Positions 4,901 to 62,905 of a stretch of DNA of 64,000 nucleotides are shown here, one piece after another. Under the pieces are notes generated by a model. That model had not been told where the DNA came from and ran no database searches. It saw nothing but the letters and a program-made list of their open reading frames with translations. This DNA comes from Tubulanus polymorphus (Eukaryota; Animalia; Nemertea). Each line of letters starts with the position of its first letter. The first letter of the stretch is position 1. A program made the position numbers and the translations under genes. The stretch lies in assembly GCF_964204645.1 (NCBI RefSeq), contig NC_134030.1:1285355-1349354 (forward strand), written 5' to 3'.

Positions 4901-5006
4901 TAGAGAATTAGTGGATGTGGTGTCCCTGGACCCCTACATGCACCATATAGAGAATTAGTGGATGTGGTGTCCCTGGACCCCTACATGCACCATATAGAGA
5001 ATTAGT
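1983..5006 (+). repeat. 47-bp highly homogeneous tandem satellite, ~64 copies
   Basis: CATATAGAGAATTAGTGGATGTGGTGTCCCTGGACCCCTACATGCAC, starts at 1983, 2030, 2077 (period 47). Confidence 0.98.
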
Positions 5007-5077
5007 TCACTGAACCAGAATAAGACTGACTGATATATTTTCAAATGATTTAATATTTTTACTTGTTTTTCTAGATA

Positions 5078-9357: not shown

Positions 9358-9392
<35 letters not shown>

Positions 9393-34113: not shown

Positions 34114-34376
34114 GTGTCAGAAAACATTTTTTCATTTAGCCCCACGTGCTGAGTGGATGATAGACATCATGAGACTCATCAAATTTTGAGAAATTAGTTT
34201 AATTGAAAAATTAATTTAAGCAATGTCTGTTTTTGCATTTCAGAGGTTGATGTTACCTGAACATGCAGTTCTGAGCTGACTCCAGATCAGGTGAGCATAT
34301 TTGCAGTGAAATTGGATAAAATCATGACATTTTCCAAAAGCTCTTATTAGTGGAATTTTATCTCTATAGCCCTTGA

Positions 34377-34901
34377 TCCAAGTGCTGCCCAGTGAGACAC
34401 TGTCTGGTGAACTCAACATCCAAGTGCTACAGAATCTACCCCCAGTGAGACACTGTCTGGTGAACTCAACATCCAAGTGCTGCAGAATCTACCTCCAGTG
34501 AGACACTGTCTGGTGAACTCAACATCCAAGTGCTACAGAATCTACCTCCAGTGAGACACTGTCTGGTGAACTCAACATCCAAGTGCTACAGAATCTATCC
34601 CCAGTGAGACACTGTCTGGTGAACTCAACATCCAAGTGCTACAGAATCTACCCCCAGTGAGACACTGTCTGGTGAACTCAACATCCAAGTGCTACAGAAT
34701 CTACCCCCAGTGAGACACTGTCTGGTGAACTCAACATCCAAGTGCTACAGAATCTACCCCCAGTGAGACACTGTCTGGTGAACTCAACATCCAAGTGCTG
34801 CAGAATCTACCCCTAGTGAGACACTGTCTGGTGAACTCAACATCCAAGTGCTGCAGAATCTACCTCCAGTAAGACACTGTCTGGTGAACTCAACATCCAA
34901 G
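34377..34901 (+). repeat. 53-bp tandem repeat, ~10 copies
   Basis: CCAGTGAGACACTGTCTGGTGAACTCAACATCCAAGTGCTACAGAATCTACC(C/T), period 53. Confidence 0.95.
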
Positions 34902-37900
34902 GAGATGATCTGTTAATTACACTCATGGTTGTGCTGGCTACTGATATGGGAGGTATGTATCGTATCTGGAGCCAATTTCACTTTGATTCCAACAACTAAT
35001 TTCTTATGATTCTCCATTTCATTTTCCATTAGAAGGAACTGTGTTATTATGATTTGTCTGAGTGTCCGTTAATGTTAGTTGAACTGTAACTCAGAGAAGT
35101 GAACCGTGGATGTGACAACTCCACACAGATGTCATGTATGTATCTGGACAATTTTCATTATCAATGTCTTTCTGTTTTAGTTTTCCGCAGAAGAATCTGA
35201 TAAATATAATGTTATGGACTTTGTGTTTTTCTTTTGAGTGTCTATCATCATTAGCTTATTTCATCATTAACAATTTTATTAATTTTTTCCTTCAGTTTAA
35301 AGAATCTGTTTAAGGAGATGATCTGTTAATTACACTCATGGTTGTGCTAGCTACTGATGAGTGGTATGTATCGTATATGGAGCCAATTTCTATTTGATTT
35401 CAACAACTAATTTCTTATGATTTTATTCAGTTTGTTTTCCTTCAGAAGAAACTTTGTTATTATCAATTGACTGAGCCTCCATCATTATTAGTTAAACTGT
35501 AACTGAGAGACATGAACCACGAATATCCTAACTCTTTAGTCAATGTGTATGTATCAGGACAACTTTCTGATTATCGATATCTTACTGTATGATTTTCCTG
35601 CAGAAGAATCTGATGAATATAATGTTATGGACTGAATGTGTTTTTCATTTTAGTGTCCATCATCATTAGTTTAACTATAACTGAAGAGACCTGAACCAGG
35701 GATGTTATAATTCCAATGTTGATATGTATGTATCACGACAACTTTCGTTATCAATGATTTTCATTTTTCGAAATCTATGAAATACGGTAGATGTGTGATT
35801 GAATCTATATTGTTCTCATTTCAGAGTCTGCTACATACATGTGATACGTGCACAGAGAGACAAATTATATTAATTTTAAACACTTATCCCTTAGTTATCA
35901 ATGATTTTCCATATTGTTTTAATCTGTTAGGAGAACTGAACTCTGGTCCTGAACATGTTTCAACTCTTCTATCAATACGTGGTTTGTATGGAAACAGAAT
36001 TTCCTGCAATAGAATCTGATGAATAGATGTCATGATATTATGTTATTCTCATTTCAGTGTCCATCATCATAAGTTGAACTGTACAGAAACCAATAGCTGA
36101 ATTGAACTGATCTCCGCAGTCAATGGTTGCAGATGGCTACAGATACGAGTGGTATGTGTGTATGGACACATTTTCAACAACTGATTTTGTATTTTATATT
36201 CTGTAGAGGAATCTTTGAGAGATAGATGTTATAGAATCTGTTATTTTCAGTGTTGATCAATGTTAGTTGAACTGTAATGAGTAGAACCAGTAGTTACTCC
36301 ACAGTCAATGGTTTAGTCAGTTACAGACATACATACAAATAGTCAGCAATAATTCCCTCAAGTGCTGTTCTGTTAAGACAATTTGTTGTAAGTAAACCCA
36401 CAATGTACGTGATGTGGTTTGTGTGTATGGAGACAATTTCATTATTTTCATTAATTATTTGTTAGGCAATGACAAATTGTCCATGGGATGACCGATTACC
36501 AGTAGATGACCAGGGAACAGTCTACATGTATGTATCGAGACAATTTTCTGTTGTTTTGAGGAATCTATAAGAGATAAATGTTATAGAATCTGTTATTCTT
36601 ATTTCAGTGTCCGTCATCATGAGTTGAAACAAATATCTGATTTGAAGTGAACTCTGCAGTCATTCAACCCTTACACATATATAAGTTACGTATTAGTGAT
36701 ATTTACCACTGACAGACAATTAAAACAACTTGTATAATAATGATTCACTGTTTGTGAATGAACTTGTGAACAGTCGCTACTCCTTAATGCTATCAGTTAC
36801 AGCCACCTTTTGATAGAATCTCTGTCTAAACCTCTTGCATGATCATCTATATCTCAATTATAATATAATAAATACTAATCCTTCATTTTAACTCTCTTCT
36901 ATTCTAATACATTGTATGAGTCAAAAGATGGTTGTCATTGATAGAATTAGGGACGCTATACAGCTGGCTAATTGTCATAATCTAAACCCTTTTTGTGTTC
37001 ACTGCATACTCTGTGACCCTCCACTTCAATGCATTTTAATTGATTCAATTTCACCAACTTTTTATATTTTTTTTTCATGTCAGCGTCAATCATTTTTACC
37101 TGCTGCAGGTAGAAATGAATCCACTGCTTGAGTGGCTATAAAAGTCGTTGGTGAAGACAAGTACACTCAATTGGAGACAATAATTTCTTTTAGATCTGAC
37201 AGTGGTAGGAATTGTAACATTTTAATATATAAGGGGCACATCTAGAAAATTGGAAGACACGTTTTAATTGATATCTGTTATTTTACGTGTTTCAGCTTCA
37301 AAATTATCCGAGTTCTACCAAATGAGATTATTCACCCATGAAGACTCGACTGATTCATACCCACATAAGGTAGTTGTACTTTCATTTTTATTAAACATTT
37401 CAATAATTAAAATTGGCGATATTAAGAAGAAAAAAGAAATTCGTAAAAATTGCATTATTTAAAGTACTTAAAACCTATTCATAAATAACAATGCGGTACC
37501 GCTACATAACAGATGGCACCACTATACGGTCGTTGCTACTACTAGACTGGTTACCTGTATAATAAGTACAATACAATGAATTTTATTCGCACGGTGACGT
37601 ATGTATTGGCATTGAAGCGCTCACTTATAATTCTATTGTTTTGAATGGGGATACTATGTAGACCCAGAAAACAACGAAGGCTGCATTACGATTGCACCTT
37701 ACACACAGGGCCACCTTCGGTTATCGGAGTCAGTCGACTTATAATAGTCCCGAGTAACTCATGTCAAATGTCGGAACTATATTCCGGAAATAGTTCGAAA
37801 ATCAAGCGCATTCGGTTATTAGTTCCAACCACTGGTCGACTAGCTACCTATTACCGAATTTGGCCCAGCCTGTCTAACTCTGGATTCGCAACTGGCAACC

Positions 37901-37934
37901 GAGTTAAGTGCTTCTCGCTAGCCAGGTTGCCGCT

Positions 37935-38033
37935 AAGCGGCCACCAGTCTATAATATTAACCCAATCACACGTCTGTCACTCGCTGATTCGCTACGCATC
38001 TGATTGGCTAGATATATAGACTGGTGGCCGCTT
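37935..38033. repeat. Palindromic MITE-like element
   Basis: 19-bp perfect inverted repeat AAGCGGCCACCAGTCTATA / TATAGACTGGTGGCCGCTT. Confidence 0.7.
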
Positions 38034-38626
38034 GACCATTGAGGCAAGCGAGGATGGTTGCGTGACTTATCGAAATGTTCGCTTGCCACAGCAGGAATAC
38101 CGTCCAATGTAATAAGTGTTTATGTATTAATTGTAGGAATGCCTGGTGATGTAGATCAAGTTCACAGAAACTGAAAACAGAAAGAAACCTTGCGGAATCT
38201 ATTGTGTATAAATAAATATATTTATTATCGTGTTGTGTTGTTTATTCTGAGTGCGATCTGTGGTGATTCAACCACTTGGTCCTCTCAAGTTTTTTTCCCC
38301 ATCCAAATTTTTGAATCCGTTTGCGCCGTTTTGACTGAAGTGATCTTTAAATTTGTATTAGTTCTAAGACTTAGACAGGTCTTAAATTCTTTCAGTTGCG
38401 GCCACCTCTCGACAAAAATCTATTGTACTAATCCTTAATAACTTTTAATAACTTCTAATCGCATGCGTCGAAAGGTGGCTGTCATAGATGGAATTAGAGA
38501 TATGATCGATGTCTAAGATGAATACAATTGCGTTTAATTTGAAACTGCTAAACAGTTGCAGTAAGAGTTAAATAACGATCATCACTGTATCTATGCTTGT
38601 GATGATTGTTCCACTCTCAGTAATTA

Positions 38627-38814
38627 CAGAGCTGCCAACTGTTACTGATTTCCAGTATTAGTTAGTATTTTATAACGAGAAATACTGATCTGATTTGTGA
38701 AGGTCTTGCCGTTGATTACTGATTAATTGAACATTCTTTTCATATTTCAATGAAACGTTACTGAAAAAAATTCAATTTGCTACTGATAGGACTTTTCAAA
38801 GGTTGGCAGCCCTG
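38627..38814. mobile_element. hAT-like MITE
   Basis: TIRs CAGAGCTGCCAAC / GTTGGCAGCCCTG; flanks TAATTA / TAGTTA. Confidence 0.7.
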
Positions 38815-38900
38815 TAGTTATCTTGGTCTCGCAACTTTACCACCTCAGTACCGGCGACGCATCACTCGTAATCCTCGCCTTCCATGCCGCGCATTTAGCT

Positions 38901-38997
38901 ATCCTCGCTTGCCGGGGTTTAATTGGTTCTGCCCAATCAGATGCGTTGTTTTTCTACCAACAAGGGGCGCCAATTTAAACCCCGGCAAGCGAGGATT
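38901..38997. mobile_element. Palindromic MITE of a dispersed ATCCTCGCTTGCC-ended family
   Basis: ATCCTCGCTTGCCGGGGTTTAA / TTAAACCCCGGCAAGCGAGGAT; related ends near 8290, 8311, 13977, 42299 and 56655. Confidence 0.6.
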
Positions 38998-41900
38998 AAT
39001 TTGTCAGCGTTGCCACCGTTAGCTCCAGTACTGTGCCATTGTCAGTTAGACTGGGTCTGAAATGGTGGTGGCAAGCTGCAGGTCTGGACTGCGCGACCAA
39101 CATTTTCCGTTCCTACATCCGAAATCTACACGTTTTCTTGGCACGTGGTAATAAGAGTTTGGTTGGTTTTTGTTCGAACGCGCCTCTGGTAGTAGACTGG
39201 TTGCCAGTTTACATTAGACTGGTTGCCGGTCTCTTTCTGTAGACCGTTTACCGGTCTCTATCTTTTATTAGAGACCGGTTGTGCCCATCCTCCATTTTAC
39301 ATTTTCGATGCATGTCAAATAAGGTCAAACATGTAAAGTAGCAGGTTACTTCCTGGTTAAGATGGCGTCTCTTCGAATCTGCTTGGCTTCGAGCGATATT
39401 AAAATTGTCCTTTATAATGGACGGAAAGACATTAATTGCTGTAAGTATCAGATAAATCCGCTGATAATTTACCTGGTATTCGGAATACCGACTAACAAGG
39501 ATCGAAATCTAATGCGAGGTGAGCTCTGCCGCGACCGTCACTGAATACAGAACATTCTGAAGGAACAGAGGACATCCTTCCTATAACTACCGTTCGTGGG
39601 ATGTATTTAGTGAATTGATGTTTTAATACAGTGTTGTAAAATGACTATATTTAGTATCCGAATAAAGTTTACAATTGCTGAACTCCTTAGTGCTTTGTGA
39701 GATCAAATATTTGGATCCACCTCAGCCAACTGATTTCCTGATACAGACAGCAAGTTGGGACAGTCAAATTAAGAGATTTGGTCAAGACAAGTTACTCAGA
39801 TCACACTGGAAATTCGCAATATCCTCTCTCCTCATGGACCACACATTGTCAATGTTGACTTTGCTAGAAATCGATTATAAAATTCATCACGACCAATTCT
39901 TTTTCACTGAATTCAATATTTATTGTTCACTTCTGGTACAAAATCTTGTTCAGCCCCTGACAAGAGAATAAACAATGACACTACGTATTTCATGACATAG
40001 AACAGTAGTTTTTTTTTCATCGACAAATTGGGACGATCCTGATATCCCTGATTTGAATGATAGTGTCTTTAGAATCATAAAGACCATGTCTCGACCAGAC
40101 AGATAATCCAATCACAATTCAAATTGAAGGCTCGCTAGTGCAGTTATTCACAGAATCCAGCTCTTTAAACCTCATCAGTTTATCAGAATCGAGGAGTTTC
40201 ACCACCTGTTATTTGGAATCTCATTTCATGACAGCTAGTGCTGATTCTTTATTCTCTTTGATTACTGCATGATGTTATCATTCTGAAATTAAAATACATA
40301 TCACACTTATAATTAAACCTGGATTGACTTTACAAATTAATGGTTCAGAATCCATTTTTCAAACTTACCTTGATGTATTGCAATCTATTCTTTTTATGTT
40401 GAGCTAATTTGATACGCATTACTTCAATTTCTTAAAACATCCTACGAGTTGTGACTCACAAAATCATCACTAAAACGCCACAATAATCTACAATAGATAA
40501 TCAATATAGTTTTTGTGAAATAGCACTCATATTCAATGTTCACATCTTACGAAGTAAGTAAGTAGGTGAAGTTACCTCGTTGGTGTGATTATTTTCACTG
40601 GATCAACTGCTGATGTCCAATGTCGCATAAAGAACAATCAATCAATCGCCTCGAGTGAACAAATAAGTTGCCTCTGCTGCATGGTTCAGTATGTTAGTAG
40701 TGGTAGTAGTATTGTATGTATTGTTACCGATATTTTCGGTACCACACGCTAAACAAGTGCCTGCAGAAGCGTTACCCGGCAGTTTTAATGAAATTTCGTT
40801 CTTCATTGATATAAACAAGAAAATTAATTTTGATAAACTATTTGACGCCTGCGAAAAAATGTAGAATTTCTAGGATAAGCTAATGTGGATTTGCAAACTT
40901 GAAATCGAAGTTTTAAGAAATTTGAGGAATTATAACATTTGGCGATTGGGTAGATGATACTTCGACTGTAGGTATAGTGGTTTAATTTTTTTATTGAAGA
41001 TTGTCAATAATTGATAACTTGCGACCGACTTCATTCATTCATATTTGCCTCTAAGCTGGTCTGCAACTTCATTGCCTCCATAGTTGAAGAAAGAGCTCTT
41101 CTGATGTCTGCTTCATCATGACTTCGAGCATATCGTGTGGCTTAGAAGGCTGGCCCGGTCCCCGGGCCCGGGTTTGGCTGTCACTCGATATACTAAAAAT
41201 TTAGTCTTGAGTCTGGGTTGAAGTGGACATTGTCATTTAAAATAATTTGTTTATGTTATTCTCTATGAATTACTCGTGTGTCTTGTGGGTTGTATTTTCT
41301 TACTTTAAAATGTGTAACTTTATTGAATTTGGGAATTTAAATCCCGGAATTTCAATGTAATAACGATCATAAAGAATTGAATTGAATTGTCACCTAATAC
41401 ACTTGCCATCAGAGCACGCGGAGCCGTATGTAACAGCTAGGCTATTATAAATTGCTAATCTCATGAAACCTGCATATCCCCCTAATATCGAACATATTTT
41501 CTAAAAAATTTGAATATTGAAATTATATGTTTACACATTTGAATATTGACCGCTTGTAGCCGCTGATGAAATTCACACCGGCCCTACACAGATCGTAGAT
41601 AGCTTCGTCATTCCACCAACATCCCCATGTCAGGGTCTGACTTTAATATCAGACTTCCGCATCGTGTATACATCCGCCATTTACTTATCATTTCTATTTA
41701 TGCCTGCCGCTTCTGATATAATCATACATCCTTAACTATTACAATACGTCTTCTAATGATATTCAATGCAATATAACATTCCGACGTTCAAATAGAGGTC
41801 ATTACATAATCACAGGAAGCCTTTCTACATGTTTGTCAATAATATTTTGCCAAATAGCTTGTATGTGTACACATAGACCTGTGACGTTTTGCACATCGAT

Positions 41901-43734
41901 TTACGGTTGTCGTTTGTAAAATGACGCTGAATGGTTAACATTGTTCAGGTTTCATAATAGTAACGTTTTATAAGGCGTCAAAATGACTTTAAAGAGGTCC
42001 ATGCGGGAACGTAAATCGCGACTCTGTGTAGGCGGCCATGTTACATAGTTCACGTGATGAAATACTGAAATCTGATTGGATCCGTAGATTCCGCGGAAAA
42101 TGGCGGACGGGCAAAACCTGTCCCATATTGAATGGCACAGGCAACCAGTCTAGTTTTCTAAACGATGTATTTATTACTCGCGTACCACAATATTTATTAC
42201 TCGCGTACCACAGTCGGACAATCGACCTATGTACGATCTCCACCGTCGCGTGCTGCCTTTACAAAAACAATAAGCGGTAAATCTGTGAACTAATTTCTAA
42301 CCTCACTTGCCACAGTAAGACACCGATCGGCAGCCGACGAAGTTAATCCCAGTCCAGTGACTAAATCGCAAATTTAGCACCAGAGGCTGAAAGTTGTTGG
42401 GAATGCGTGGCTGTAAATCATAAATAAAATATATATTAAACTAAAAGTATGTGTTTATGTTGATGGTTGAGTTTTTGTCAAGGTGTGGAATGCGCGTTTG
42501 TGCCGATCATACAGCAACTTATGATTGTTTGTACATCAGCCAGAACCCAGGTCCACTCATTAGGATCCAGTTCCACAGATCAGGATCCAGCTCCTAGGAT
42601 CCAGTTCCACAGATCAGGATCCAGCTCACAGAATCCAGTTGCATATAGTTTGATCCAAGGTTAGACTTATAGTAATATGTTCATTTCCACAGTGTTAGTC
42701 TTGACTTTAATTTTGAGCATACAAAAACATCTCGATTCAACGGACGGCTAATTACGATTCAAGAGAGGCTTCTAGGTATAATGTGAACAAATGTTTTAAA
42801 TGAAGTTAAATGATTTAATGTAGATAGTTTAAAGTCGATGAGCCTCTGATTTTAATCTATACATGTTCACGGATTTGTCCCATTATAACCTATTTCTTAT
42901 AATCACAGGTCAGCGGTCGCCATTGTGTCCGGATTCAGGTTGAATTTTGATCGACTTTTTTCACAATGGAATCGGTGCGCATTCCTTTACCGGATATCGA
43001 TCGTATGGTATTGTTATAGATAATCGCTTGGATGGACCGCAACTCTTCCGATCCATTTTACCTGACCAGCACCTTCCTTTCGACCACTGGACACCAGACA
43101 GCTAGCACCTCCTGTGAAAATTCTCCCAGAACCCGAACGTGTTTGGTAAGTGTTAACATTTGACATAACCATTAGAAATTTATTCGTAAGAAACTTGTTT
43201 CATTTCCGCTTATGTTTTCCGCACCCAGTTGAACAGTTTAAGAATGATTTTGACTCTTTAAAAGTTAAATTTTTGACGATGAAATAAATTACTCTTACTA
43301 AACAATTCATTTCAAATGTGGCTGACTCTTGACTGGTTAAACTCAATTCGATTGACTTTAAGCCCGGGTTAATGTTGATACTGCTCTATTAAACCAGCCC
43401 CTGTTCTCAATTTTTTAGTTTTATTGCCAACAATTCGTACTTAACCGTTTTTAGCTTAATGTTCTCACAAACTCGCTAGGCCATGGTGTCAATTTTTAAT
43501 TTCATTGAAGTTTGTACTGTTTAATACATGTCATCTAAATTTTAATTTCAAAATCAAAATAATTTGAAGTGTTCAATGTGTTGTCCTCTTTTGTAGGATA
43601 GCGAAAACACACTGTTGGAAATAACTGAAGTCTGAACAAATCGTTGAGAAGCGCAATTCTTTTTGGTGAGTAAGTATATATCGCTTTCTTTCATCATTTT
43701 CATTCTTTTACAACTCCCAGTCTTAAATGTATCA

Positions 43735-43865
43735 ATCAGTTTCCCTCAGGCCAGGTACCCATCTTGGGTGGAGCAGGGAGGTCACCTCCCTGAGTGTCGT
43801 GCGGAATTCGAACACGCGAGTTGGCTTCCCAGATTCGAACGCGACAACCACGGCTCGCCCGCCGC
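43735..43865 (-). mobile_element. tRNA-derived SINE fragment
   Basis: Minus strand: B-box-like GTTCGAATTCC followed by CCACCCAAGATGGGTACC, resembling SINE core domains. Confidence 0.45.
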
Positions 43866-44384
43866 TGTTAAATCTTTCGTAATTTTTTAGGAGTCCTAAA
43901 ACCGTTTTTAGTCTGAAAAAATTCTGAAACTTCAAAACTTCTGAAAAAAACTATTTACTTATTGAGATAATACGCAAATTCATTTCTGAAATCCCTTTTG
44001 TCGAACCGGGTGATTTATCTCATCGCTATATCTGCGGCGAAAAAACCGATATGCGCGAGCAGTTCTGAACGGCGGGGAATCCCCGTAACGTTCTCCGCAG
44101 CAAAGCCACGTGACACGACTAACTTGTACGTGCGTGCTCCGTATTAGTGAAGACACTGTTACTGGGGTCATCATTCTAAAACAAGGTTATTCACGAGATG
44201 CTGGTTCAGAGATCGCCGCCAGTACTCTTAGACTAGTTGAGGTCACACTAGAGCAGCGAGATTTATAAAATAGATACCGCGCCCTTTGAATTGATGTCAG
44301 TATTCTTTAGATCTCTCAAACCGGCTGAGTAACTTTTGAATTTTATGTTTTCTAGCATTTGCTGGTGAGTCATCGATCCACATC

Positions 44385-44500
44385 GGGGACCGCACCTAGG
44401 AGCAGCAAGTAGGAGCAGCCACAGGGACCACACCTAGGAGCAGCCACAGGGACCACACCTAGGAGCAGCCACAGGGACCACACCTAGGAGCAGCCACAGG
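44385..44500 (+). repeat. 25-bp tandem repeat x4
   Basis: GGGACCACACCTAGGAGCAGCCACA. Confidence 0.9.
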
Positions 44501-45363
44501 AGGGACTGACCTGAATTGGGAATCACTGAATGGAAAAGATAAGTAGAGATATATTTATTATTAAACTACAATATTTTTGGAGTACAGGTCTTGAGATGTT
44601 TTCAAACTTCCCATCATCTCTTCAGGTGTTTCTGTTGTAGTATGTGGTTATTTTTCTGTTCAGGTGTCGCCCCCATATTTTTCTGATTGCTAGCAAAAAA
44701 CAGGGTTAAATTGCTGTATCAAGCATATTACGATGTTAGATAAATTTGTTCTTGTTGTTCAGGCGTTTCTGCAGTTTTTGAATGTTTTAATGTAAAGTCC
44801 ATCACCGATTTACACACCACATTCAGGTATTCTCTATCGTGATAAATTGTGAATCAAAAACTTACATATTTAGACTTAATTAGAAATTCATTGGTTCAAA
44901 AGGTTTTCATTTATAAAAAAATGTTAAAATTGATTGAAAATAATTACATTGTTGTAATGGGAGTGATTTTTCGACCCTAATTAACATCGAAAAAGTTAAA
45001 CAGAAAATTTAGAAAAAAAATAATTAAATAAATAATAAAATAGATAAGTAAATCTAGTCCTGCTTTCACAAAAAAGTTTTGTTCAGACTTTTTGGGAAAT
45101 TGGATATATATATATAACTTATATTTATTTTAATCATCAGGTATAATATAGCAATTGACTTGAAATGAATATCATACTAGTATTTATAAACATACAAATC
45201 TTCATTAACAAACTAGGGCAAAACATCCCAAAAACGTTAGTTAAAGATATATCATAATTCATTTACTCATTTCAAAATTAGATTTACCATATTTACATAT
45301 ATCATATCATATATCGTTATCTCAATTTTTATGGTTATTCAACTACCTCAATTCTGGGATTTA

Positions 45364-46089
45364 TTAAATAGCAACAATTGTGCAAAATCTTAGTATTTTC
45401 ACTGGTGTCACTTTCTTCTTTTTGCCGCTGCTTTTATTTAAAGAAAACACGTTGGCCTTCGTCAATTTGATAATAATAATTGTCTTATTTGGAAAGAAAT
45501 TCTTGGATTCAGAAAATATAGCACTTGTATCTGAATTCTTGGAAATATTCATTGAATCATCAATCGAAGTGACAAAAATTAGACAAAAAATACTTTTAGT
45601 GGATAAATGGTGGTTGTAAGCGGGATTGTTAGACGGAGAGGGGAGATAGAGGAACCACTCGTCTTTTCTTCTGATGCTGTCCTGTCTTGCATTCTGTGAC
45701 GCAGATTGTAGTTGGATAAACACAGCTGATATCTCATTATCATCGTAATTGAAATGTATGTTGTACCTCTGAATCTGCATTATTTTTGGCGGCCGAGGTC
45801 CACTTGTTCCCTCACTACAACTGCTGTCCGATCCTTTTCTCTTTCTCGAGGTTTTGGAATTAATATTAAAAGTTCCGTCCATCAGCTCTTAGCCGTTGAG
45901 AAGTACTGCGTGAAAATGAGCAAAACTAGTAATCATAGCTTGACCTGGTTTCTCAATGATGATGTCACTGGGAAAGCCTTTTGGAATAGTTGAAAGGCTT
46001 GATGTTAATACTTGATCTGGATGGGTCCGCGCCCCTTCTATAGTGTCAAAAATATATAAATTGTGAAATTTTCCAATTTGGATGCTGTT
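45364..46089 (-). pseudogene. ~240-codon frame with one in-frame TAA; unknown product
   Basis: After acceptor TTTCATTTCCCAG: NSIQIGKFHNLYIFDTIEG...VLLNG*EL runs in frame into the 172-aa ORF MDGTFNINSKTSRKRK... Confidence 0.3.
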
Positions 46090-46367
46090 CTGGGAAATGA
46101 AAGGATAATTTCACTCTGTTTTTATCATTTGGTTTTAACGGATAATTCTTGCTGGAAACTACCGTCTTGTGTCTGAACACTCGATATATCGATTTCACTT
46201 GTGTGTGTGTCATTAGCATGTGTTGCTTGAAATGTGACTTTTGCTCAAACTATTGACAGCATATTACAGTTTGATTCATTATTATCACCAGTAGTCATTG
46301 CACGCTTTAATCTAACATTGCTAAGGTAATTTTAGGTAATTGCCCTCCCATTCTATCTGGTGTGCAG

Positions 46368-49300
46368 CTATCTGATAGGCCGCTGCTGAGGCGTATTAAT
46401 CCGATTTTGGGGAGGGGCAGCAGCGGGCGACAAAGGTGGTGGTAATATCCTATCGGGAACCAAGTTTCTTTTAAATTCCTCCACCAATTCCCCAAACGGA
46501 CATTCGTCTAAAATGTTGATGACTGTAAAATAAAAATAGGGAGAAATACATGAAACAACAAGTCGAATGGTTTCGATGCTACGGTTAAGAATTCTGGTAC
46601 TCGGCGAGGTTAAACATTCATTTCTTAAACTTTACAATCGATTGTCACATTGATGGCGCCATCTATCCTTTCTAAAAACAACTATAGGATTTCAATTGCA
46701 CAATGTTAATACTAGGGAACAACAGTTATTATTAGATTTTGATTATCAGTGACACACGTCACACTAAATGATATTGTATGAAAATAGTTAAACTACTTAC
46801 ACTTCGGTAGAAATAAACGTACAAACTCCTCCCGCCGGAACGCACGACGAATTCTAAAAGCAAGTGTTCCTGCTTGACAAAACTAGTTTGAATAAGAGCT
46901 GTTTGTTTTAATGAGATGAACTGAATCAATAGAATTATGTAACTGAACCTAAGTGTGTCCAGTTCCCAAATAAGGATTTGTGTTTTTCTAACCCATTTAC
47001 GTAAGATATCAACAGACAGGGTTTATTCAGAGGTCAATCCTAAATGTCCCTCCCTTGAGAAGAATGACATTTCAGGTCATCAAAAGATAAAAATTCATTT
47101 AAAATCTGAATCTTTGGCTTTTCTATAAACAGATTGCAGATTGCATTGGCTTGAAACCTGCTTTTATTTTATAATCGAGTCCGTCAAACAGTTCAATACT
47201 TTCTTACACTTATTCTTAACAAAGTATGAATAAATTAGCATGAAAACAGTACATTTGTAATTGCAGCAGCTTAGCCGCTTGAAGTCGAAGGGTCTGCCCC
47301 CCCCCCCCGTGTTTTTCTCTGAGCTTTCGGCATCTAGTAAGATAACTATGATATAATGATATTAATAGAAAAATTTAAAGTAAAAGTATTGAATAAATTG
47401 AAGATACATCATATAATCGAGCCAGTCAAACAGTTCAGTACTTTCTTACAACTATTCTTAATCATGAATAAATTAGCATGGAAACAGTAAATGTGTACTT
47501 ACAGTAGCATACGGGCTGGAACTTGAGGGGCCCGCGCCCCAGGTTTTTCTAATTGCTTTAGGCATTGTTGTAATGCATGGTATGAATAATTAGTATGGAA
47601 GCAGTACATTTGTAATTGCAGCAGCTTATGGGCTGGAGGTCGGGCTGGAAGTCGAAGCTTCTGCGCCCCCTGTTTTTCTCTGAGCTTTCGGCATCTAGTA
47701 AAATAACTATGATATAATGATATTAATAGAAAAATTTAAAGTAAAAGTATTAAATAAATTGAAGATACATCATATAATCGAGGCAGTCAAACAGTTCAGT
47801 ACTTTCTTACAACTATTCTTAAGCATGGTATGAATGAATAAGCATGGAAGCAGTAAATTTGTACTTACTTTATTATAGGGGCTTGAATGTGAGGGGCCCG
47901 CGCCCCGGGTTTTTCGAGTAGCTTTTGGCATCTTCTAGAAAAACAAGTAAAAATATTAAATCATTTGAAAATATATCAGTCAGTCTTATTCTGGTTCAGT
48001 GAACTAATTCTTTATATGGTGCATGTAGGGGTCCAGGGACACCACATCCACTTATTCTCTATATGATGCATGTAGGGGTCCAGGGACACCACATCCACTA
48101 ATTCTCTATATGGTGCATGTAGGGGTCCAGGGACACCACATCCACTAATTCTCTATATGGTGCATGTAGGGGTCCAGGGACACCACATCCACTAATTCTC
48201 TATATGGTGCATGTAGGGGTCCAGGGACACCACATCCACTAATTCTCTATATGGTGCATGTAGGGGTCCAGGGACACCACATCCACTAATTCTCTATATG
48301 ATGCATGTAGGGGTCCAGGGACACCACATCCACTAATTCTCTATATGATGCATGTAGGGGTCCAGGGACACCACATCCACTAATTCTCTATATGATGCAT
48401 GTAGGGGTCCAGGGACACCACATCCACTAATTCTCTATATGGTGCATGTAGGGGTCCACTCTATATGGTGCATGTAGGGGTCCAGGGACACGTATTGTTA
48501 AAAAGAGGCAGTTTAACGTCATACCACAGGACAAACAGATAAAAATCACTGATAAAATGTATGGTTAAAACGTATTGTTAAAAAGAGGCAGTTTAACGTC
48601 ATACCACAGGACAAACAGATAAAAATCACTGATAAAATGTATGGATAAAACGTATTGTTAAAAAGAGGCAGTTTAACGTCGTACCACAGGACAAACAGAT
48701 AAAAATCACTGATAAAATGTATGGTTAAAACGTATTGTTAAAAAGAGGCAGTTTAACGTCGTACCACAGGACAAACAGAGTGCAATAATCAATGATTTTA
48801 ATCCAAATAAGATCTTTTTAGTTGTGACTGTTTGAATTGAGAGGCGGCGATCTCGCTAGTGAGCCAAAAGACAGACACTTGAAATGAAAATAATATAAAT
48901 AGTCAATTTCATTCGACATTTTTATTATGACGTTCATTAATTAAAAAATTAGCATGAAAGCAAAGAATTTATAATTACAGGAGCATATGGGCTTGATGTT
49001 GAGGGACGCCCTTGTCCGCTGGGTGCCTTTTTCATGGCTTATGATATCTAAAAAAATTAGTAATAATATTAAATAAATTGAAAATATATCATATATCGAG
49101 CCAGTCAAACAGTTCAGTACTTTCTAACAACTATTCTTAATCATGAATAAATTAGCATGGAAACAGTAAATTTGTACTAACAGTAGGATACGGGCTTGAT
49201 GTTGAGGGCCCGCACCCCACGTTTTTTTCACTGCTTTCGGCATTATCTAGAAAAATAAGTAAAACTATAAAATCATTTGAAAATACATAATATATCAGAT

Positions 49301-50052
49301 TGTGGTAATCATGGTAATCATGGTATGAATAAATTAGCACGGACGCAGTAAATTTGTTCTAGCATCATTTGTACTGGACGTGAGGGTGCCCTCGCCCGCT
49401 GGGCGTTTTTGCAGCTTTAGGCATATAGAAAAAGTAAAAATATTAAATCATTTGAAAATATATCTAGCCTCTCATACAGTTAAGTACTTTTACTTGCCTT
49501 ATTCTTAAGCATGATATAAATGAATTATGCTGGGCGTGAGACAGAAACGGAAAGAAAACAGGCCGGCCCAATTCCCGGCCACCTTCATACCGGATGTTGA
49601 GTCAAAAAGGTGCTTTGGGCTTTAAAGAATTGAAGACACTATTGTAAGCCGAAATAATTGTGGAATTGGACTAAAATTAAATCAAAAAATATGTGGTACA
49701 TGTTATAGTTGATTTTTTTTCAGTGAAGGCATATTAGGTGCACATGAACGACTCATGCGTTCAAGGCATATCCCTTCACTGAAAGAATATTTTTTAAATC
49801 GGTTAACAAATCCGGAATTGTCCCCGAACGAAGCCGCTCCTCCAATAGGAATCTCCCAGAGGCAATTTAATTGATGGGCACATTTTCAAAATTTGTTTTG
49901 GTTATCGGGCCCCCGACACAGAGTTATGAAAACTGGTCACAACTTTTAACTACATACAAAAAAATTGAATGCATTGAAATTGTATTTGGAGACTGAACTT
50001 ACTTGGTGCTTGAAAGTCGGGAGGCGTCTCTGGAGGGGTGCTACTGCTGCTG

Positions 50053-50113
<61 letters not shown>

Positions 50114-51285
50114 TGTTGTTGTTATTTGACAGATTAGAAACAGGCGTCTCCGGAGGGGTGGGCTGCTGCTGCTGCTGCTGCTGTTGCTGTTGTTGTTATT
50201 TGACAGATTAGAAACAAGCGTCTCCGGAGGGGTGCGCTGCTGCTGCTGCTGCTGTTGCTGCTGCTGTTGCTGTTGTTGTTATTTGACAGATTAGAAACAG
50301 GCGTCTCCGGAGGGGTGCGCTGCTGCTGCTGCTGCTGCTGTTGTGATTCACCGACTGTAAATGGAAATAATATAAAAATAAATGCAACAGAAAATGAACA
50401 CAACAGGCACTTATTACACGGTAGTTCAGTAGAATGAAGGGGTCTGGGTAGAAAAACGTGTATTCTAAGATTATCAGTATATATTTCCGTGAGGAATGTG
50501 AGATTGAGGGCGTCACTGATACTTACATTAAGCGACGGTGACCTTGCCTGCGAGGCAAACTGACGCTAGAAATGAAAATTAAAAAAATACATTAGTCAAA
50601 TTCATTAACGTTGCTAAGTTCAAGTTGCTGGTTTTTTAAACAATTTTAATAAGAAAAAAATATTCAGGTATAGCTAGCACTATGTCAGGAACGTAGCTTG
50701 AGGCGGTTCGGGGGGGGTTCGAAAATTCAGTTCCTCGCAAAGAAAAATTAAAAACAGAAATGTTAAACTTACAAATATTGAAATTTGTTCATTTAATCAA
50801 AACCTTCGTTATATCAATAGAAATCTCCCAGAGGCAATTTAATTGATGGGCACATTTTCAAAATTTGTTTTAGTTAGCGGCCCCCGACACAGAGTTATGA
50901 AAACTGGTCACAACTTTAACCGTTTTAGCTCCATACAAAAAATTGAATGCGTTGAAATTTTATTTGAAGACTGAACTTACTTCGCGCTTGGAAGTCGGGA
51001 GGCGTCTCTGGCGGAAGGGATGCGCTTCTGCAGCTGCTGTTGTTGTTATCCGAATTCAGAGGTAGCGATCGGCCTGGCGACCCAAAGTAGAGACGCTAGA
51101 AATTAAACAATAATATAAATATATTAGTCAATTTCATTAAAGTTTAAATTTTCAACATTTTTATTGTAACGTTCATTAGTTAATAAATTAGCATGAAGCG
51201 ATGAATTTGTACTCACAGGTGCATATGGACTTGATGTAGAGGGACCCCCTTGTCCGCTGGGTGCCTTTTTGGTGGCTTTTGACAT
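46368..51285 (-). CDS. Gene B: spliceable short paralogue of gene A, 135 aa (exons 51285-51217, 51095-50981, 46869-46801, 46522-46368); may be a pseudogene
   Basis: AG/GT borders, phases 0,1,1: MSKATKKAPSGQGGPSTSSPYAP|RLYFGSPGRSLPLNSDNNNSSCRSASLPPETPPDFQAR|RTLAFRIRRAFRREEFVRLFLPK|FINILDECPFGELVEEFKRNLVPDRILPPPLSPAAAPPQNRINTPQQRPIR*. The stop is CAG>TAG relative to gene A. Confidence 0.45.
48003..48490 (-). repeat. 47-bp satellite, inverted, ~10 copies
   Basis: Reverse complement of the 1983-5006 unit, joined to an exon-1 copy by the same ~70-bp linker as at 5006-5074. Confidence 0.97.
48491..48779 (+). repeat. 80-bp tandem repeat x3.6
   Basis: CGTATTGTTAAAAAGAGGCAG... at 48491, 48571, 48651, 48731. 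Confidence 0.95.
49555..49843 (-). pseudogene. Inverted copy of the end of exon 9 and 3' UTR of gene A
   Basis: Reverse complement of ~21197-21490. Confidence 0.85.
49925..50885 (-). pseudogene. Inverted copy of gene A intron 4-exon 5 (50565-50527)-exon 6 (50354-50003); exon 6 internally amplified and frameshifted
   Basis: Reverse complement of ~8765-9525; exon 5 still encodes RQFASQARSPSLN. Confidence 0.85.
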
Positions 51286-52559
51286 CTAAAAACATTAGTT
51301 ATAATATTAAATAATATGAAAATATATAATATATCGAGCCAGTCAAACAGTTCAGTACTTTCTTACAACTATTCTTAATCATGAATAAATTAGCATGGAA
51401 ACAGTAAATTTGTACTAACAGTAGGATACGGGCTTGATGTTGAGGGCCCGCAACCCACGTTTTTTTCACTGCTTTCGGCATTATCTAGAATAATAAGTAA
51501 AACTATAAAATCATTTGAAAATAAATTATATATCAGATTGTCAAACGGTTCAATACTTTCTTAATCATGGTATGAATAAATTAGCATGGACGCAGTAAAT
51601 TTGTACTAGCACCATCGTTTGTACTGGACGTGAGGGTGCCCTCGCTCATTGAAATTCCCTTTTGTTTACCATGAGGTAACATTTCAGATGGAGCCACTTT
51701 GACTATAATAAACGGTTGTAGTTCTACTGTTCACTGCTTCAGGTTTTCTATTGCAATATGTCACTATTGAACAAGAAACAAGAAATCAATCGAAGTTTGT
51801 CCGAACTGGTTTTTCAGTTTTTCTCCACTCGTCTTTAACGGGCTATCAATCAATATGGTCGAAAGTGCAGAATGTTCCAGCTGATAAAAACTGGGTTCCA
51901 AAATAATCAGCCCTTTGCATGTGATGATGCGAACGATCTGCCTGGGTGCACCCTGGTATAGATTTGACGATGCAGTAATGTATGACGGACATTACCTGTC
52001 AGTAGCAGAAGCAGGGTTTAATATTCTATATATATATATAAATTTCGGTTTCAAGCTCAAGAATGATGACTTCAAACAGGTGTTTACGATAACTTACGTC
52101 AATTCCGGACATAGAAATATCAAACCGCCGTTGATGTTGCTGTTGTTGTTGTTGTTGTGTTCTATTAGCGTAAGGGCTTGACGTTGAGGGGCCCGCGCCC
52201 GAGGTTTTTCTGATGGCTTTTGGCATAATTCGTAATGTGGATGGGCTGGCGTCCCATGTGTTTTGTTTGCTTTTAGCATACTTGAATGGTTAATGCTTAA
52301 CATCTCTCCCAGATTGTATTGGCTTGAAACCTGCCTTATTGGTATCTAGAAAAATATGTATAACTATTTAATCATTTGAATATACATTTTATAATTAGTC
52401 AGTCATACAGTTCAGTACTTTCTTACACTTATTCTTAAGCATAGTATGAATAAATTAGCATGAAAAGAGTAAATTTGTAGTTAGCAGCATACGGGCTGGG
52501 AGTAGAGGGGCCGGCGCCCCACATTTTTTCATGGCTTTTGGCATTGTTTTCTTTGTTTG

Positions 52560-52760
52560 TGGCAGCAACTATGGGTCGGTCTGTCTTGAGTTTGTTGGTT
52601 GTTGCAGCAGCTATGGGTCTCTCTTGAGTTTGTTGATTGTTGCAGCAGCTGGGTCAGTCTTGAGTTTGTTGGTTGTTTCAGCAGCTATGGGTCAGTCTTG
52701 AGTTTGTTGGTTGTTTCAGCAGCAGCAGCTATGGGTCAGTCTTGAGTTTGTTGGTTGTCT
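52560..52760 (+). repeat. ~38-bp tandem repeat x5
   Basis: GCAGCTATGGGTCAGTCTTGAGTTTGTTGGTTGTT. Confidence 0.85.
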
Positions 52761-53217
52761 TGATTTTTTTCTATAGGAATTCAAGAACAAAGTAGTTGCA
52801 TGTAGGTAGACACATTCATGAATCACTCAGTGTCTTCCTGTCCCACCATAACTTCCTTGATCCTCATTACTCGGATTTATTCTCTGAACCACTTTTCCAT
52901 GTTTGTTGTGGTTTGTTTGTTTTGATTTGCTGGTGGTTTAAGCATGCATGTAGAGGGAGCTCTATCAATCCAGGAACAGTCAGCTCACAAGCAGCCCCTG
53001 CCCCAAAAGGTTTAGACATATTTTCAAAAGCTCTTGTTCTGTAGAACCGAGAGCGGAGCTCTGACTTGATCCCCTCACTGCTGAGGTCTACTTTCTCTGA
53101 TTCGCTGATTGGCTTCTCTTTGGTACATTTTAGATGATCAAAAACTAGAAACTGTCATGCGTTTATTCATTTTGGTATATGTTAAAATTCTTTTACAGTA
53201 AAGGCATATTAGGCACA

Positions 53218-54268
53218 TCAAAACAAATCCGGAATTGTCCCCGAACGAAGTGGCTCCCTCCACTCTCCATCAGTATGCCGGGCCACCACCTCTACCTCTC
53301 GGGCCACTCGATCCCTCGCCAGCTTTTTGGGCGAGTGAACGAGTGACCGCCCGAGATACGGATGGAGGAGCAGGACCCGCACCTGCCCCAGCCCCACCAC
53401 CATCCCTCCTCGGCCTCTTCCTATTAATTCTTACCCCTTCCTCCTGATTGCCTTGATCAGCTGCGCCATCCGCAGTGGCAACTCTTGCCTCCCCTCCCTG
53501 AGGAGCCACGACGACCGCAACTTTTCTTTTCCTTTTCGTGCGAGTTTTTTTTGGCGGTGGTCGTGTCTGTAAAGAGAAAAAAATGAACAATAAGTATTTA
53601 GTATAATACACCTATGTGCGTATAATACACCTATGTGAGTCCTTCGCTATTAAACACATAGAACTGTGGAACTGGATCCCGAGGCTAATCTAAATGCGCG
53701 CAACTGAGTCCAAGTGCAACTAAAGCACACAACTGCGGATCAGATAAATCATTGGTAGATTCACTTGTAAAATATCTCGCTAAGAACAAACTGAAAACTG
53801 TAGAATGTTGTTGAAACTGTTGTGTGTTATTCATTTGGGTATATGTTATATTTAAATTTTTTTCAGTGAAGGCATATTAGGCGCACATGAACGTCTCATG
53901 CGTTCAAGGCATATCCCTTCACTGAAAGAATATTCTTTAGATCAGTTAACAAATCCGGAATTGGCCCCGAACGAAGTGGCACCCTCCACTCTCCATCAGT
54001 ATGCCGGGCCACCACCTCTACCTCTCGGGCCACTCGATCACTCGCCAGCTTTTTGACGAGTGACCGCCCAAGATACGGATGGAGGAGCAGGAGGAGCAGG
54101 ACCCGCACCATCTCCAGCCCCACCACCATCCCTCCTCGGCCGCTTCCTATTTATCACCTCCCCTTCCTCCCGATTACCTTCGTCAGCCGCACCATCCGCC
54201 GGGACCACTCTTGCTCCTCCTCCCTGCGGAGCCACGACGACCGCAACTGGTACTTTTCGGTTTCTCAT
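53218..54268 (-). pseudogene. Two tandem inverted copies of gene A exon 9 (53566-53218; 54268-53896), both frameshifted near VTRSLAKK
   Basis: ORF track shows TRPPPKKTRTKRKRK...VTRSLAQK and MRNRKVPVAVVVAPQGGG...; the C-terminal half continues in another frame. Confidence 0.88.
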
Positions 54269-55212
54269 GGTTTCCCACCATCTTTCAAAAGAGAACTATC
54301 GATATATCATTAGCTACAAGGAAACTTTTCAGAAACTTTTTCAGGTCATTCTTTCTTGTATTATTAGCATTTGATTCTCTATATATCGTCAGAACATGGA
54401 CTCAGAGTGTTTCTTTAATGGTTAAGAATGTCTCTTTCACCAACATCCCCCTTAGCCTGGTTCCTACATATCCCTTCCCTTTCCTCCTGATTACCTTTGA
54501 TCCCCACTGCCTAGCAGCTAACAGCTGCTGCTATTTTATCTGGTTTACATGTTTTGCAGATAGTGTCTGTTATGCTATAGTTGTTCTTTTAATCGTTTAA
54601 CTTCTTCATCTGAAATTTCATTATTCTAATTTCAGTTTCACGCAGGAAATGGTTCATGAAAATCTGCATTGAGACTGGGACGAAATGTGCATTGAGACGG
54701 ATGAAATCTGCATGAACAGAGATATACTTTAAGATCCCCATTTTATCCATCGGAGTGAATGTACATCCACTACTCACAGGTAGCAAACCTACAAACGCTA
54801 AACACTCATCCCTGGGCCCTGATTCAAAAATAAAAATAAAAGATTAAATTAAGAATTAACATTTTTATGAATCAGTGATCAGTTTCATAAAATAATTCCT
54901 AAATTAATTTTAGGGGTTTATTATTTCAGATTGAAATGAATTCTTCATGTTTATGCAATTCTCATTATCTTTCATTGCAGCATTTATATATTCAATTTTA
55001 ATCATACATGTGAAATATATAATGTATTTTCAGGGAAACGTAAACAAGAAAGGAAGGGAAGGGAAGAAAGAGAAAGGAAGGGAAGAAAGAGAAGGGAAGG
55101 GAAGAAAGAGAAGGGAAGAAAGAGTTGGATGATTAATGCGCACTTATTCTCCATTCCGAATTCCTGTATTCGACTCTAGGTGATCATCATACGAACGAGA
55201 TATAGAAAAAAA

Positions 55213-62853: not shown

Positions 62854-62905
62854 GTTTTTGTCAATCATCATATCAAGATTTGCAATCCCAGTTGCCTTCA
62901 AGTTT

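What the first reader, a model, noticed from the sequence alone, without database searches (positions are those of the whole stretch)
46368..54270. Gene plus scrambled antisense copy of itself in one unit: possible gene/small-RNA suppressor pair
Seen: 8 kb on the minus strand is a mosaic of gene A pieces in non-colinear order (E9,E9,E1,E1+2,E1,E1,E1,E5+6,E5,E6,E9-3',E1,E1,E1,E5+6 start,satellite,E1x4,E7,E8) with differing divergences. Plus-strand transcription through it would give RNA antisense to gene A and to several variants. Established: amplified genes paired with fragment-derived piRNA/hpRNA suppressors occur in genetic-conflict systems (Stellate/Su(Ste), Dox/Nmy-Tmy). Inference: this may be such a system, or an archive of past gene A variants; it could also be a neutral rearrangement graveyard.
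Basis: partly seen in the sequence, partly recalled or inferred. Interest (0 to 1): 0.8.

Follow-up and report, generated by a model that had tools for sequence, protein, structure and literature searches.

The report
Inverted gene-fragment cluster in tandem array
An 8-kb stretch beside a roughly 30-copy orphan gene of a ribbon worm consists of backward-facing broken pieces of that gene, apparently the worn remains of about four inverted copies that still swap short patches with the working copies; it could supply antisense small RNAs or store exon variants, but no RNA data show that it does either.

Summary
Window 46364-54497 holds 28 segments homologous to gene A (5078-21274). All are inverted, and they cover about 5.0 of 7.9 kb.

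The scrambling is only apparent. Read on the minus strand, the region parses into four blocks, each in gene order. These look like the remains of about four truncated inverted gene copies, plus local tandem duplications that are 84-87% alike.

Fragments carry introns and flanks, so they are DNA-level copies. The one exception is an intron-1-less E1+E2 junction.

The cluster belongs to the long (60-kb) repeat unit. Seven copies on contig C6 are 97-100% alike, and at least two more lie on C3. The 32-kb units keep a mini version.

The cluster has no internal hairpin. Its + strand would be near-perfectly antisense to E9 and the 3'UTR, but not to E1 of most gene copies.

Exon parts are far more diverged than their flanks (E8: 82% against 98%), and they carry hybrid patches. 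This shows ongoing short-tract exchange with the genes.

No RNA data could be reached, so the suppressor idea is untested. First readers flagged the same structure in two other units of this array (s1-518724, s1-518667).

My reading is a recombining pseudogene relic with a plausible but unproven small-RNA or variant-store role.

The parts
5078..21274 (+). Gene A, the intact copy in this unit. Nine GT-AG exons (E1 5078-5140, E2 6304-6387, E3 6798-6836, E4 7213-7239, E5 9101-9139, E6 9350-9434, E7 17672-17737, E8 19518-19747, E9 20882-21274); 1026 nt.
   Evidence: Exon-by-exon frame and splice-site check. No Pfam family for E8 or E9. No word-search relatives for E9.
1983..5006 (+). 47-bp satellite array ending 72 nt upstream of the E1 ATG; the source of the inverted sat47 in the cluster.
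   Evidence: TRF; blastn.
53222..54258 (-). Block 1: two inverted E9 pseudogene copies (54258-53838 matches gene 20917-21349; 53606-53222 matches gene 20845-21234). Both are frameshifted.
   Evidence: They are 84% alike to each other, 87% to C6/C3 genes and 88-89% to C8 paralogues.
49526..52545 (-). Block 2, in gene order: E1', the E1+E2 fusion with intron 2, E1' x2, E5', E6' and E5-E6 tandem duplicates with CAG runs, then the E9 3' end plus 3'UTR.
   Evidence: internal duplicates.
51782..52229 (-). E1 fused in frame to E2, with intron 1 (1163 nt) missing. The 5' flank (interrupted by a 113-nt insert) and 312 nt of intron 2 (99% identical to the gene) are retained. It is a recombinant relative to the copy-a cluster.
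48836..49464 (-). Block 3: E1' x3 then E5'. This is an old duplicate (86%) of part of block 2.
46364..48491 (-). Block 4, in gene order: sat47 (48491-48003), E1' with an intact ORF and donor (47978-47820), two decayed E1' copies, then a contiguous E7'-short intron 7-E8' piece (46848-46364).
48490..48796 (.). 80-bp tandem repeat (3.6 copies) between blocks 3 and 4. It has no gene A homology.
52546..53221 (.). Non-genic spacer inside the cluster with a 38-bp tandem repeat. Its part 52921-53221 is also kept in every 32-kb unit sampled.
29696..46363 (.). Long-unit-specific spacer between gene A and the cluster. It is absent from the 32-kb units of C6 and present in most C3 units. It contains a dispersed ~1.5-kb repeat at about 39.2-40.8 kb.

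Best explanation
The region is a non-coding relic. A stretch of the gene-A tandem array, about four gene copies with their sat47 leader, became inverted. It was then whittled down by deletions and re-expanded by local tandem duplication, especially of the E1 unit beside the satellite. It is now carried along as part of the long (~60 kb) repeat unit.

The relic is not inert DNA. It stays in recombinational contact with the ~30 active copies through short-tract gene conversion and unequal crossing-over. This explains the mixture of very young flanks (98-99%), old exon versions (67-88%) and hybrid patches.

Shown here: the anatomy, the co-amplification, the pseudogene state and the exchange. Inferred: that it has no selected function of its own. 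If its + strand is transcribed, antisense pairing with E9 and the 3'UTR would follow automatically.
For: All 28 segments are inverted, and they parse into four blocks in gene order.

Fragments include introns, the 5' flank and sat47, and have no poly(A) at the E9 3' boundary. They are therefore DNA-level copies.

The fragments are pseudogenes. The E9' copies are frameshifted. Most E1' copies have lost the ATG, the frame or the donor. E8' has an in-frame stop.

Internal duplicates are 84-87% alike, whereas whole clusters in seven C6 units are 97-100% alike. The cluster was therefore built once, long ago, and then co-amplified.

The 32-kb units are deletion derivatives that keep only E1'-sat47 and one E9'. 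Most gene copies therefore do without a full cluster next to them.

The copy-a cluster carries 3.5 extra tandem 2.68-kb blocks [sat47-E1-E1+2-E3/E4-E8]. The window's E1+2 is a recombinant across them.

E8' copies are hybrids of gene-type and cluster-type patches.

There is no inverted repeat inside the cluster.
Against: The cluster is old: its E9' is as far from gene A as the C8 paralogues are. Yet it survives in two arrays, on C6 and C3, that otherwise turn over fast.

Exon-derived parts differ more between two cluster copies than flanks do: 3.45% against 1.6-1.9%, Fisher p = 2e-5. The excess persists outside CpG sites at 2.8% against 1.5%.

Exon/intron divergence jumps within 2 nt of a splice site. 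Simple neutral decay does not predict this.

E1 is both the most variable exon among gene copies and the most amplified fragment in the cluster. This may not be a coincidence.
Confidence: 0.55

Rival explanations
1. Antisense small-RNA source (piRNA or endo-siRNA) that restrains the amplified gene. + strand transcription through the cluster gives RNA complementary to gene A mRNAs. Gene copies then recode their exons to escape, and the cluster keeps up by taking in gene sequence.
For: The fragments have a uniform antisense orientation.

Perfect 21-mers cover 347/393 nt of E9 and 174/239 nt of the 3'UTR in all six gene copies. With a second cluster added they also cover 210-230/230 nt of E8.

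Flanks are refreshed to 98-99%.

Among gene copies, synonymous divergence is 0.17-0.29 in E1+E3+E4+E5, against ~1% in introns. This fits selection on RNA sequence rather than on protein.

E1 of 4 of 6 gene copies shares no 21-mer with any of the 11 E1' copies, which has the look of escape.

Amplified young genes paired with homologous small-RNA loci are known in Drosophila (bioRxiv 10.1101/2021.08.05.454923; PMC10292708; PMC10317233, found).
Against: No RNA evidence of any kind was reachable.

The uniform orientation follows from one inversion plus local duplication, so it is not 28 independent events.

There is no hairpin in the cluster.

E9, the best-matched target, is not diverging among gene copies (0-2 differences in 393 nt). 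This is the opposite of escape.

Most units carry only the mini cassette.
Confidence: 0.25
2. Reservoir of exon variants. The cluster stores diverged exon cassettes between near-identical flanks. It donates and receives short patches by gene conversion, and this generates the patchwork exons seen among the ~30 gene copies. It would be a germline analogue of pseudo-V or silent-cassette systems.
For: Diverged exons sit inside 98-99% identical flanks. That is the geometry a conversion donor needs.

E8' copies are hybrids of two sequence types, with patches of 10-40 nt.

At 13 of 17 variable E1 sites, every allele seen in genes is also present in cluster copies.

The youngest cluster E1' shows the same exon-confined variation between clusters as the genes do.

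An intron-less E1+E2 junction shows that at least one RNA-templated event occurred.
Against: Only gene-to-cluster transfer is actually demonstrated, by the refreshed flanks and by a gene-type patch in a cluster-type E8'.

Genic E8 carries no cluster-type patches (0-3 differences in 230 nt).

Allele sharing at E1 is also expected if young cluster copies are simply recent copies of gene variants.

Only six gene copies could be examined.
Confidence: 0.12
3. Working truncated paralogue on the minus strand. The inverted sat47-E1 drives a shorter, spliced gene product from block 4 (E1...E7-E8).
For: Block 4 keeps sat47. E1' has an intact ATG, a 21-codon ORF and a GT donor (47978-47820). E7' and E8' follow in gene order with their intron.
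Against: E1 ends in phase 0 but E7 is entered in phase 1, so an E1-E7 splice is out of frame.

E8' has an in-frame stop.

There is no E9 or other recognisable terminal exon.

The neighbouring E1' copies are decayed.
Confidence: 0.03

Closest known systems
Stellate / Su(Ste) of Drosophila melanogaster (own knowledge; reviewed in PMC12224907)
   Same: An amplified, lineage-restricted tandem gene is accompanied by repeated, degenerate homologous copies that could give antisense RNA. Similarity between gene and fragments is about 87-95% over the last exon.
   Different: Su(Ste) repeats cover most of the gene, lie on another chromosome (Y), and have proven antisense transcription and piRNAs. Here the fragments sit inside the same repeat unit, are heavily truncated, and have no RNA evidence.
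Dox-family drivers and the Nmy/Tmy hpRNA suppressors of D. simulans (bioRxiv 10.1101/2021.08.05.454923; PMC10292708; PMC10317233)
   Same: A young amplified gene family flanked by satellite DNA, with suppressor loci built from pieces of the target. Both partners turn over rapidly.
   Different: hpRNAs are inverted repeats that fold on themselves. This cluster has no internal inverted repeat, so a hairpin would need a read-through transcript of more than 25 kb that includes gene A.
Uni-strand piRNA clusters such as flamenco (own knowledge)
   Same: Fragments of the target lie in one uniform orientation, antisense to the target.
   Different: Those clusters collect many transposon families by independent insertions. 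Here there is one cellular gene, and the orientation is explained by a single inversion plus local duplication.
Pseudogene donor arrays for gene conversion (chicken pseudo-V, trypanosome VSG, Borrelia vls silent cassettes; own knowledge)
   Same: Truncated gene segments without promoters lie next to expressed copies. Diverged cores sit within homologous flanks, and there are short hybrid patches.
   Different: Those systems act somatically or clonally on one expressed copy, and donor-to-acceptor transfer is proven. Here only germline sequence is seen, and only gene-to-cluster transfer is demonstrable.
Ordinary inverted or truncated pseudogene debris inside tandem (possibly subtelomeric) gene arrays
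   Same: Frameshifts, lost start codons, deletions, local duplication and co-amplification with the unit.
   Different: Divergence is confined to exons with sharp splice-site boundaries, and there is continuing patch exchange.

Membership tests
hpRNA (endo-siRNA hairpin locus) | Long inverted-repeat arms within one transcription unit that fold into a hairpin | tested here: not met
   The repeat finder (inverted) on 46000-54700 found only one 44-nt pair at 70% complementarity. All intra-cluster blastn hits are direct repeats.
hpRNA (endo-siRNA hairpin locus) | Homology to a protein-coding target gene | tested here: met
hpRNA (endo-siRNA hairpin locus) | Dicer-dependent ~21-nt siRNAs from the arms | not testable with these tools
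   No read-level RNA data are available.
Su(Ste)-type piRNA suppressor repeats | Repeated copies homologous to the amplified target | tested here: met
   28 fragments; E9' is 90-95% identical; the cluster recurs in 7 units on C6.
Su(Ste)-type piRNA suppressor repeats | Antisense transcription and piRNAs (24-31 nt, 1U, ping-pong signature) | not testable with these tools
   No RNA data. The E9 word search found no transcript-derived proteins.
Uni-strand piRNA cluster | Many independently inserted fragments in one orientation | tested here: inconclusive
   The orientation is uniform (28 of 28). However, the fragments derive from one inverted segment plus tandem duplication, so they are not independent insertions.
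Pseudogene fragment cluster (non-functional relic) | Disabled reading frames and truncation | tested here: met
Pseudogene fragment cluster (non-functional relic) | Evolution indistinguishable from that of neighbouring non-genic DNA | tested here: not met
   Exon-derived parts differ by 3.45% against 1.6-1.9% between two clusters, p = 2e-5. CpG sites explain only part of this. Hybrid patches are present.
Gene-conversion donor array | Patches in expressed copies traceable to a silent donor | tested here: inconclusive
   At 13 of 17 variable genic E1 sites all alleles are shared with cluster copies. The direction is unresolved, and genic E8 has no cluster-type patches.
Processed (retro) pseudogene | Loss of all introns, poly(A) tail, no flanking gene sequence | tested here: not met
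   Introns 2, 5 and 7 and the 5' flank are retained. There is no poly(A). Only intron 1 is missing, in one fragment type.

The most novel reading that the evidence does not exclude
The cluster and the ~30 gene copies form one germline diversification-and-control system. The cluster would be a store of old exon versions that trades 10-40-nt patches with the active genes, partly through spliced RNA as the intron-less E1+E2 junction hints. At the same time it would supply antisense small RNAs. This would explain why exons, but not introns, differ by 17-29% at synonymous sites between copies.
Probability: 0.1. Interest if true: 0.85.

Novelty: new member of a known kind. Interest (0 to 1): 0.45.

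Why it matters
If the cluster is transcribed, this would be a candidate gene/suppressor pair outside arthropods and vertebrates, in a spiralian with no genetic-conflict system described. Target and putative suppressor would sit in the same repeat unit.

Independently of function, the locus shows an unusual pattern that can be measured precisely. Exon sequence diverges several-fold faster than the adjoining intron, in genes and in dead fragments alike, and the boundary lies at the splice site. That pattern asks for a mechanism, whether RNA-level selection, RNA-templated conversion, or conversion blocked by heterology. The fragments give a built-in set of controls for working out which one applies.

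If the cluster is not transcribed, it is ordinary array debris. The main value of this follow-up is then that the 'scrambled' order has a simple explanation.

Tried and rejected
Tried without result:
- Rfam scan of the window at gathering threshold found nothing.
- Word-index protein search with E9 found no hit, so there is no transcript-derived evidence.
- Pfam scan of E8, E9, the E9' ORF and the 172-aa ORF at 45364-45882 found nothing above threshold.
- Folding of the 266-nt tandem units downstream of gene A gave nothing better than shuffles.
- A search for an upstream 5'UTR exon matching the sequence before the E1+2 copy found nothing in the window. That sequence is a 113-nt insert between the E1 5' flank and the ATG.
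- A literature search for the species' genome paper found none in the library.

Limits on the data:
- Fetching the whole array was cut short. I did not try to obtain more DNA by another route. Only six gene copies, two long clusters and four mini cassettes were therefore studied at base level; the rest is known from coordinates and identities only.
- The joined spliced protein of gene A was not built or searched. Exons were checked and searched one by one, by reference.

Rejected readings:
- Assembly artefact. The structure recurs with variation in 7 units.
- Processed retrocopy. Introns and flanks are present and there is no poly(A).
- Self-hairpin.
- Single inversion with clock-like decay.
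- CpG decay alone as the cause of the exon excess.
Full report
SETTING

The window is eukaryotic. It is satellite-rich, has GT-AG introns and gives no Rfam hits. It lies at G000:C6:1285355-1349354 in a 268-Mb, 77-contig assembly. Earlier notes of this scan call the organism the ribbon worm Tubulanus polymorphus. I did not verify that.

Positions 1-331 repeat at 60701-61049, and the same two satellites (19-mer and 47-mer) stand at both ends. The window is therefore one ~60.7-kb period of a tandem array.

Gene A lies on the + strand. I re-derived a nine-exon GT-AG model that is stop-free exon by exon (1026 nt):
- E1 5078-5140
- E2 6304-6387
- E3 6798-6836
- E4 7213-7239
- E5 9101-9139
- E6 9350-9434
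- E7 17672-17737
- E8 19518-19747
- E9 20882-21274

I did not build or search the joined protein. E8 and E9 searched separately have no Pfam family, and E9 has no word-search relatives.

E9 occurs about 29 times at 98-100% identity: 18 on C6 and 10 on C3, plus one on C8. There are also five diverged copies (89-95%) on C8.

THE OBSERVATION

Self-comparison and a best-hit tiling show 28 segments between 46364 and 54497 that match the gene unit. All are inverted. They account for 4993 of 7907 nt: 2098 nt CDS-derived, 311 nt 3'UTR, 489 nt sat47 and 2095 nt intron or flank.

Two refinements apply. The 'E5+6' pieces still contain intron 5. 'E1+2' is a true in-frame exon-exon junction: intron 1 (1163 nt) is gone, while the E1 5' flank and 312 nt of intron 2 are kept.

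WHY THE ORDER LOOKS SCRAMBLED

Read 5' to 3' on the minus strand, the segments fall into four blocks, each in gene order:
- Block 1: [E9', E9']
- Block 2: [E1', E1+2-intron 2, E1', E1', E5', E6' / E5-E6 duplicates, E9 3' end + 3'UTR]
- Block 3: [E1', E1', E1', E5']
- Block 4: [sat47, E1', E1', E1', E7'-intron 7-E8']

Block 3 is an 86% duplicate of part of block 2. The E5-E6 segment, the E1 unit and the E9' pair are likewise tandem duplicates at 84-87%.

The E7'-E8' piece is a contiguous 491-nt copy of a gene version with a short intron 7. That version still exists in the gene copy at C6:1194244.

The E9 3' fragment ends in E1-unit sequence, not in poly(A).

The simplest history is an inverted piece of the array holding about four gene copies. 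It was cut down by deletions and locally re-duplicated, above all around E1 next to the satellite.

The fragments are pseudogenes. The E9' copies are frameshifted. Most E1' copies have lost the ATG, the frame or the donor. E8' has an in-frame stop.

THE CLUSTER IS PART OF THE REPEAT UNIT

Cluster-specific probes find seven copies on C6, at about 1036-1053, 1232-1244, 1331-1339 (this window), 1489-1498, 1616-1627 and 1717-1728 kb, plus an inverted one at 673-687 kb. They are 97-100% alike. At least two more diverged loci lie on C3.

I fetched C6:1030001-1230000.

The cluster there ('copy a') is colinear with the window's at 95-99%. It also carries 3.5 extra tandem 2.68-kb blocks of [sat47 - E1 - E1+2 - intron 2 - E3/E4 region - E8]. 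The window's E1+2 copy is a recombinant that spans this deletion.

The common 32-kb units of C6 are deletion derivatives. After window-equivalent 29695 they keep only an inverted E1'-sat47 and one E9'.

The long-unit spacer (about 30-46 kb) is present in most C3 units, so the long form is probably ancestral.

The cluster's E9' is 87% identical to C6/C3 genes and 88-89% to the C8 paralogues. The cluster is therefore old relative to the recent amplification.

EXCHANGE WITH THE GENES

Flank identities to gene A fall into classes:
- 98-99% (sat47-E1, E2-intron 2, E7 flank)
- 96% (the E9 3'-end fragment)
- 89-94%
- 83-87%

A single inversion followed by clock-like decay is therefore rejected.

Within fragments the exon part is much more diverged than its flank:
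- E1: 67-83% against 83-98%
- E2: 90% against 99%
- E7: 88% against 98%
- E8: 86% against 94%

E6 and E9 do not show this pattern.

In the contiguous E7'-E8' piece, intron 7 is 98% identical to the gene and E8 about 82%. The change occurs within 2 nt of the acceptor.

E8' copies in different clusters are hybrids of a 'gene-type' and a 'cluster-type' sequence, with patches of 10-40 nt. They differ by up to 12% from each other, while the surrounding DNA differs by about 2%.

Between the window's cluster and copy a, exon-derived sites differ by 3.45%, against 1.6-1.9% elsewhere (Fisher p = 2e-5). CpG sites are hypermutable in both classes (8-9%). Outside CpG the excess remains: 2.8% against 1.5%.

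Among six gene copies:
- E1 differs by 8-17% and E3 by 10-18%.
- Introns differ by ~1% and E8/E9 by under 1.5%.
- In E1+E3+E4+E5, pS is 0.17-0.29 and pN is 0.04-0.07.

This partly confirms earlier notes on exon-only variation (s1-516446, s1-516447).

At 13 of 17 variable genic E1 sites, all alleles are also found in cluster copies. Genes and fragments thus share a pool of exon variants. Only gene-to-cluster transfer is directly demonstrable.

COULD IT WORK AS AN ANTISENSE SOURCE?

There is no inverted repeat inside the cluster. It is therefore not a self-folding hairpin locus. A hairpin would require a read-through transcript of more than 25 kb from gene A.

RNA from the + strand would carry perfect 21-mers against 345-347 of 393 nt of E9 and 164-175 of the ~239 nt of the 3'UTR in all six gene copies. 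It would also match parts of E2, E6, E7 and E8. It would match none of E3-E5, and none of E1 in four of six copies, despite 11 E1' copies.

So the potential is real for the last exon. However, E9 is exactly the exon that is not diverging between copies, which argues against an escape race there. The E1 pattern could be read as escape.

No transcript or small-RNA data could be reached with these tools.

VERDICT

The best-supported reading is an old inverted pseudogene relic that is co-amplified with the long unit and still recombines with the genes (confidence about 0.55). A small-RNA suppressor role (0.25) or a variant-reservoir role (0.12) is compatible with the data but unproven.

First readers flagged the same structure at two other units of this array (s1-518724, s1-518667). 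I know of no follow-up to either.

Comparators are from my own knowledge and from papers found (bioRxiv 10.1101/2021.08.05.454923; PMC10292708; PMC10317233; PMC12224907). The locus fails the defining hairpin feature of hpRNAs. The defining RNA features of Su(Ste)-type or piRNA-cluster loci could not be tested.

Noticed in passing
window 142-5006 and 60842-64000: Each gene copy is preceded by about 1.8-2.0 kb of a 19-bp satellite (ATCGCTGTTTTTGGGTTAG, with a telomere-like GGGTTAG core) and then a 47-bp satellite (3 kb in the one array that lies whole in the window), which here ends 72 nt before the E1 ATG. The arrays lie 0.4-1.8 Mb from the starts of contigs C3 and C6, which may be subtelomeric.
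   Followed up: partly
window 17794-19447 versus L018 (C6:1206094-1206245): Intron 7 is 1780 nt in the window's gene but 278 nt in the copy at C6:1194244: 1654 nt replace 152 nt. The cluster's E7'-E8' piece carries the short version at 98%, so the short form is probably ancestral.
   Followed up: partly
window 5078-5140, 6798-6836 and the five gene copies in L004-L018: Among six gene copies, synonymous differences in the small 5' exons reach 17-29% while adjoining introns differ by ~1%. The protein is conserved (pN 0.04-0.07). One copy (C6:1060600) has a 3-nt deletion just before the ATG and a 6-nt insertion in E3.
   Followed up: partly
window 5031-5077: The sequence just upstream of the E1 ATG (TTTTTCTAG|ATAATG) looks like a 3' splice acceptor. 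E1 may therefore not be the first exon; there could be an upstream non-coding exon or trans-splicing. No candidate upstream exon was found in the window.
   Followed up: partly
window 14000-15250: Frame-shifted reverse-transcriptase-like ORF fragments (a YLDD motif) lie in intron 6 of gene A, between satellite blocks.
   Followed up: no
window 39240-40820: A ~1.5-kb dispersed repeat is present at 88-97% identity on many contigs (C1, C2, C3, C4, C7, C8, C9, C12, C15). It is embedded in the long-unit spacer.
   Followed up: no
window 25586-28997: Two arrays of ~266-nt tandem units lie downstream of gene A. Earlier first-reader notes (s1-518725, s1-518791), on what I take to be the equivalent stretch of a neighbouring unit, called such units hairpin-bearing. 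Two units folded here gave z-scores of +0.07 (+ strand) and -1.9 (- strand), so they are not clearly structured.
   Followed up: partly
window 54259-54700: The stretch just right of the cluster is 98.6-99.1% identical in all units sampled, slightly more conserved than its surroundings. It overlaps a 173-aa + strand ORF (54079-54600) that starts antisense to E9'.
   Followed up: no
L002-L003 (C6:1041401-1050692): The copy-a cluster contains 3.5 tandem 2.68-kb 'mini-genes' [sat47-E1-E1+2-intron 2-E3/E4-E8] in gene order. One has an E8 that is 98% identical to the gene. This cluster type supplies perfect matches to nearly all of E8, and to E3 of one gene copy.
   Followed up: partly
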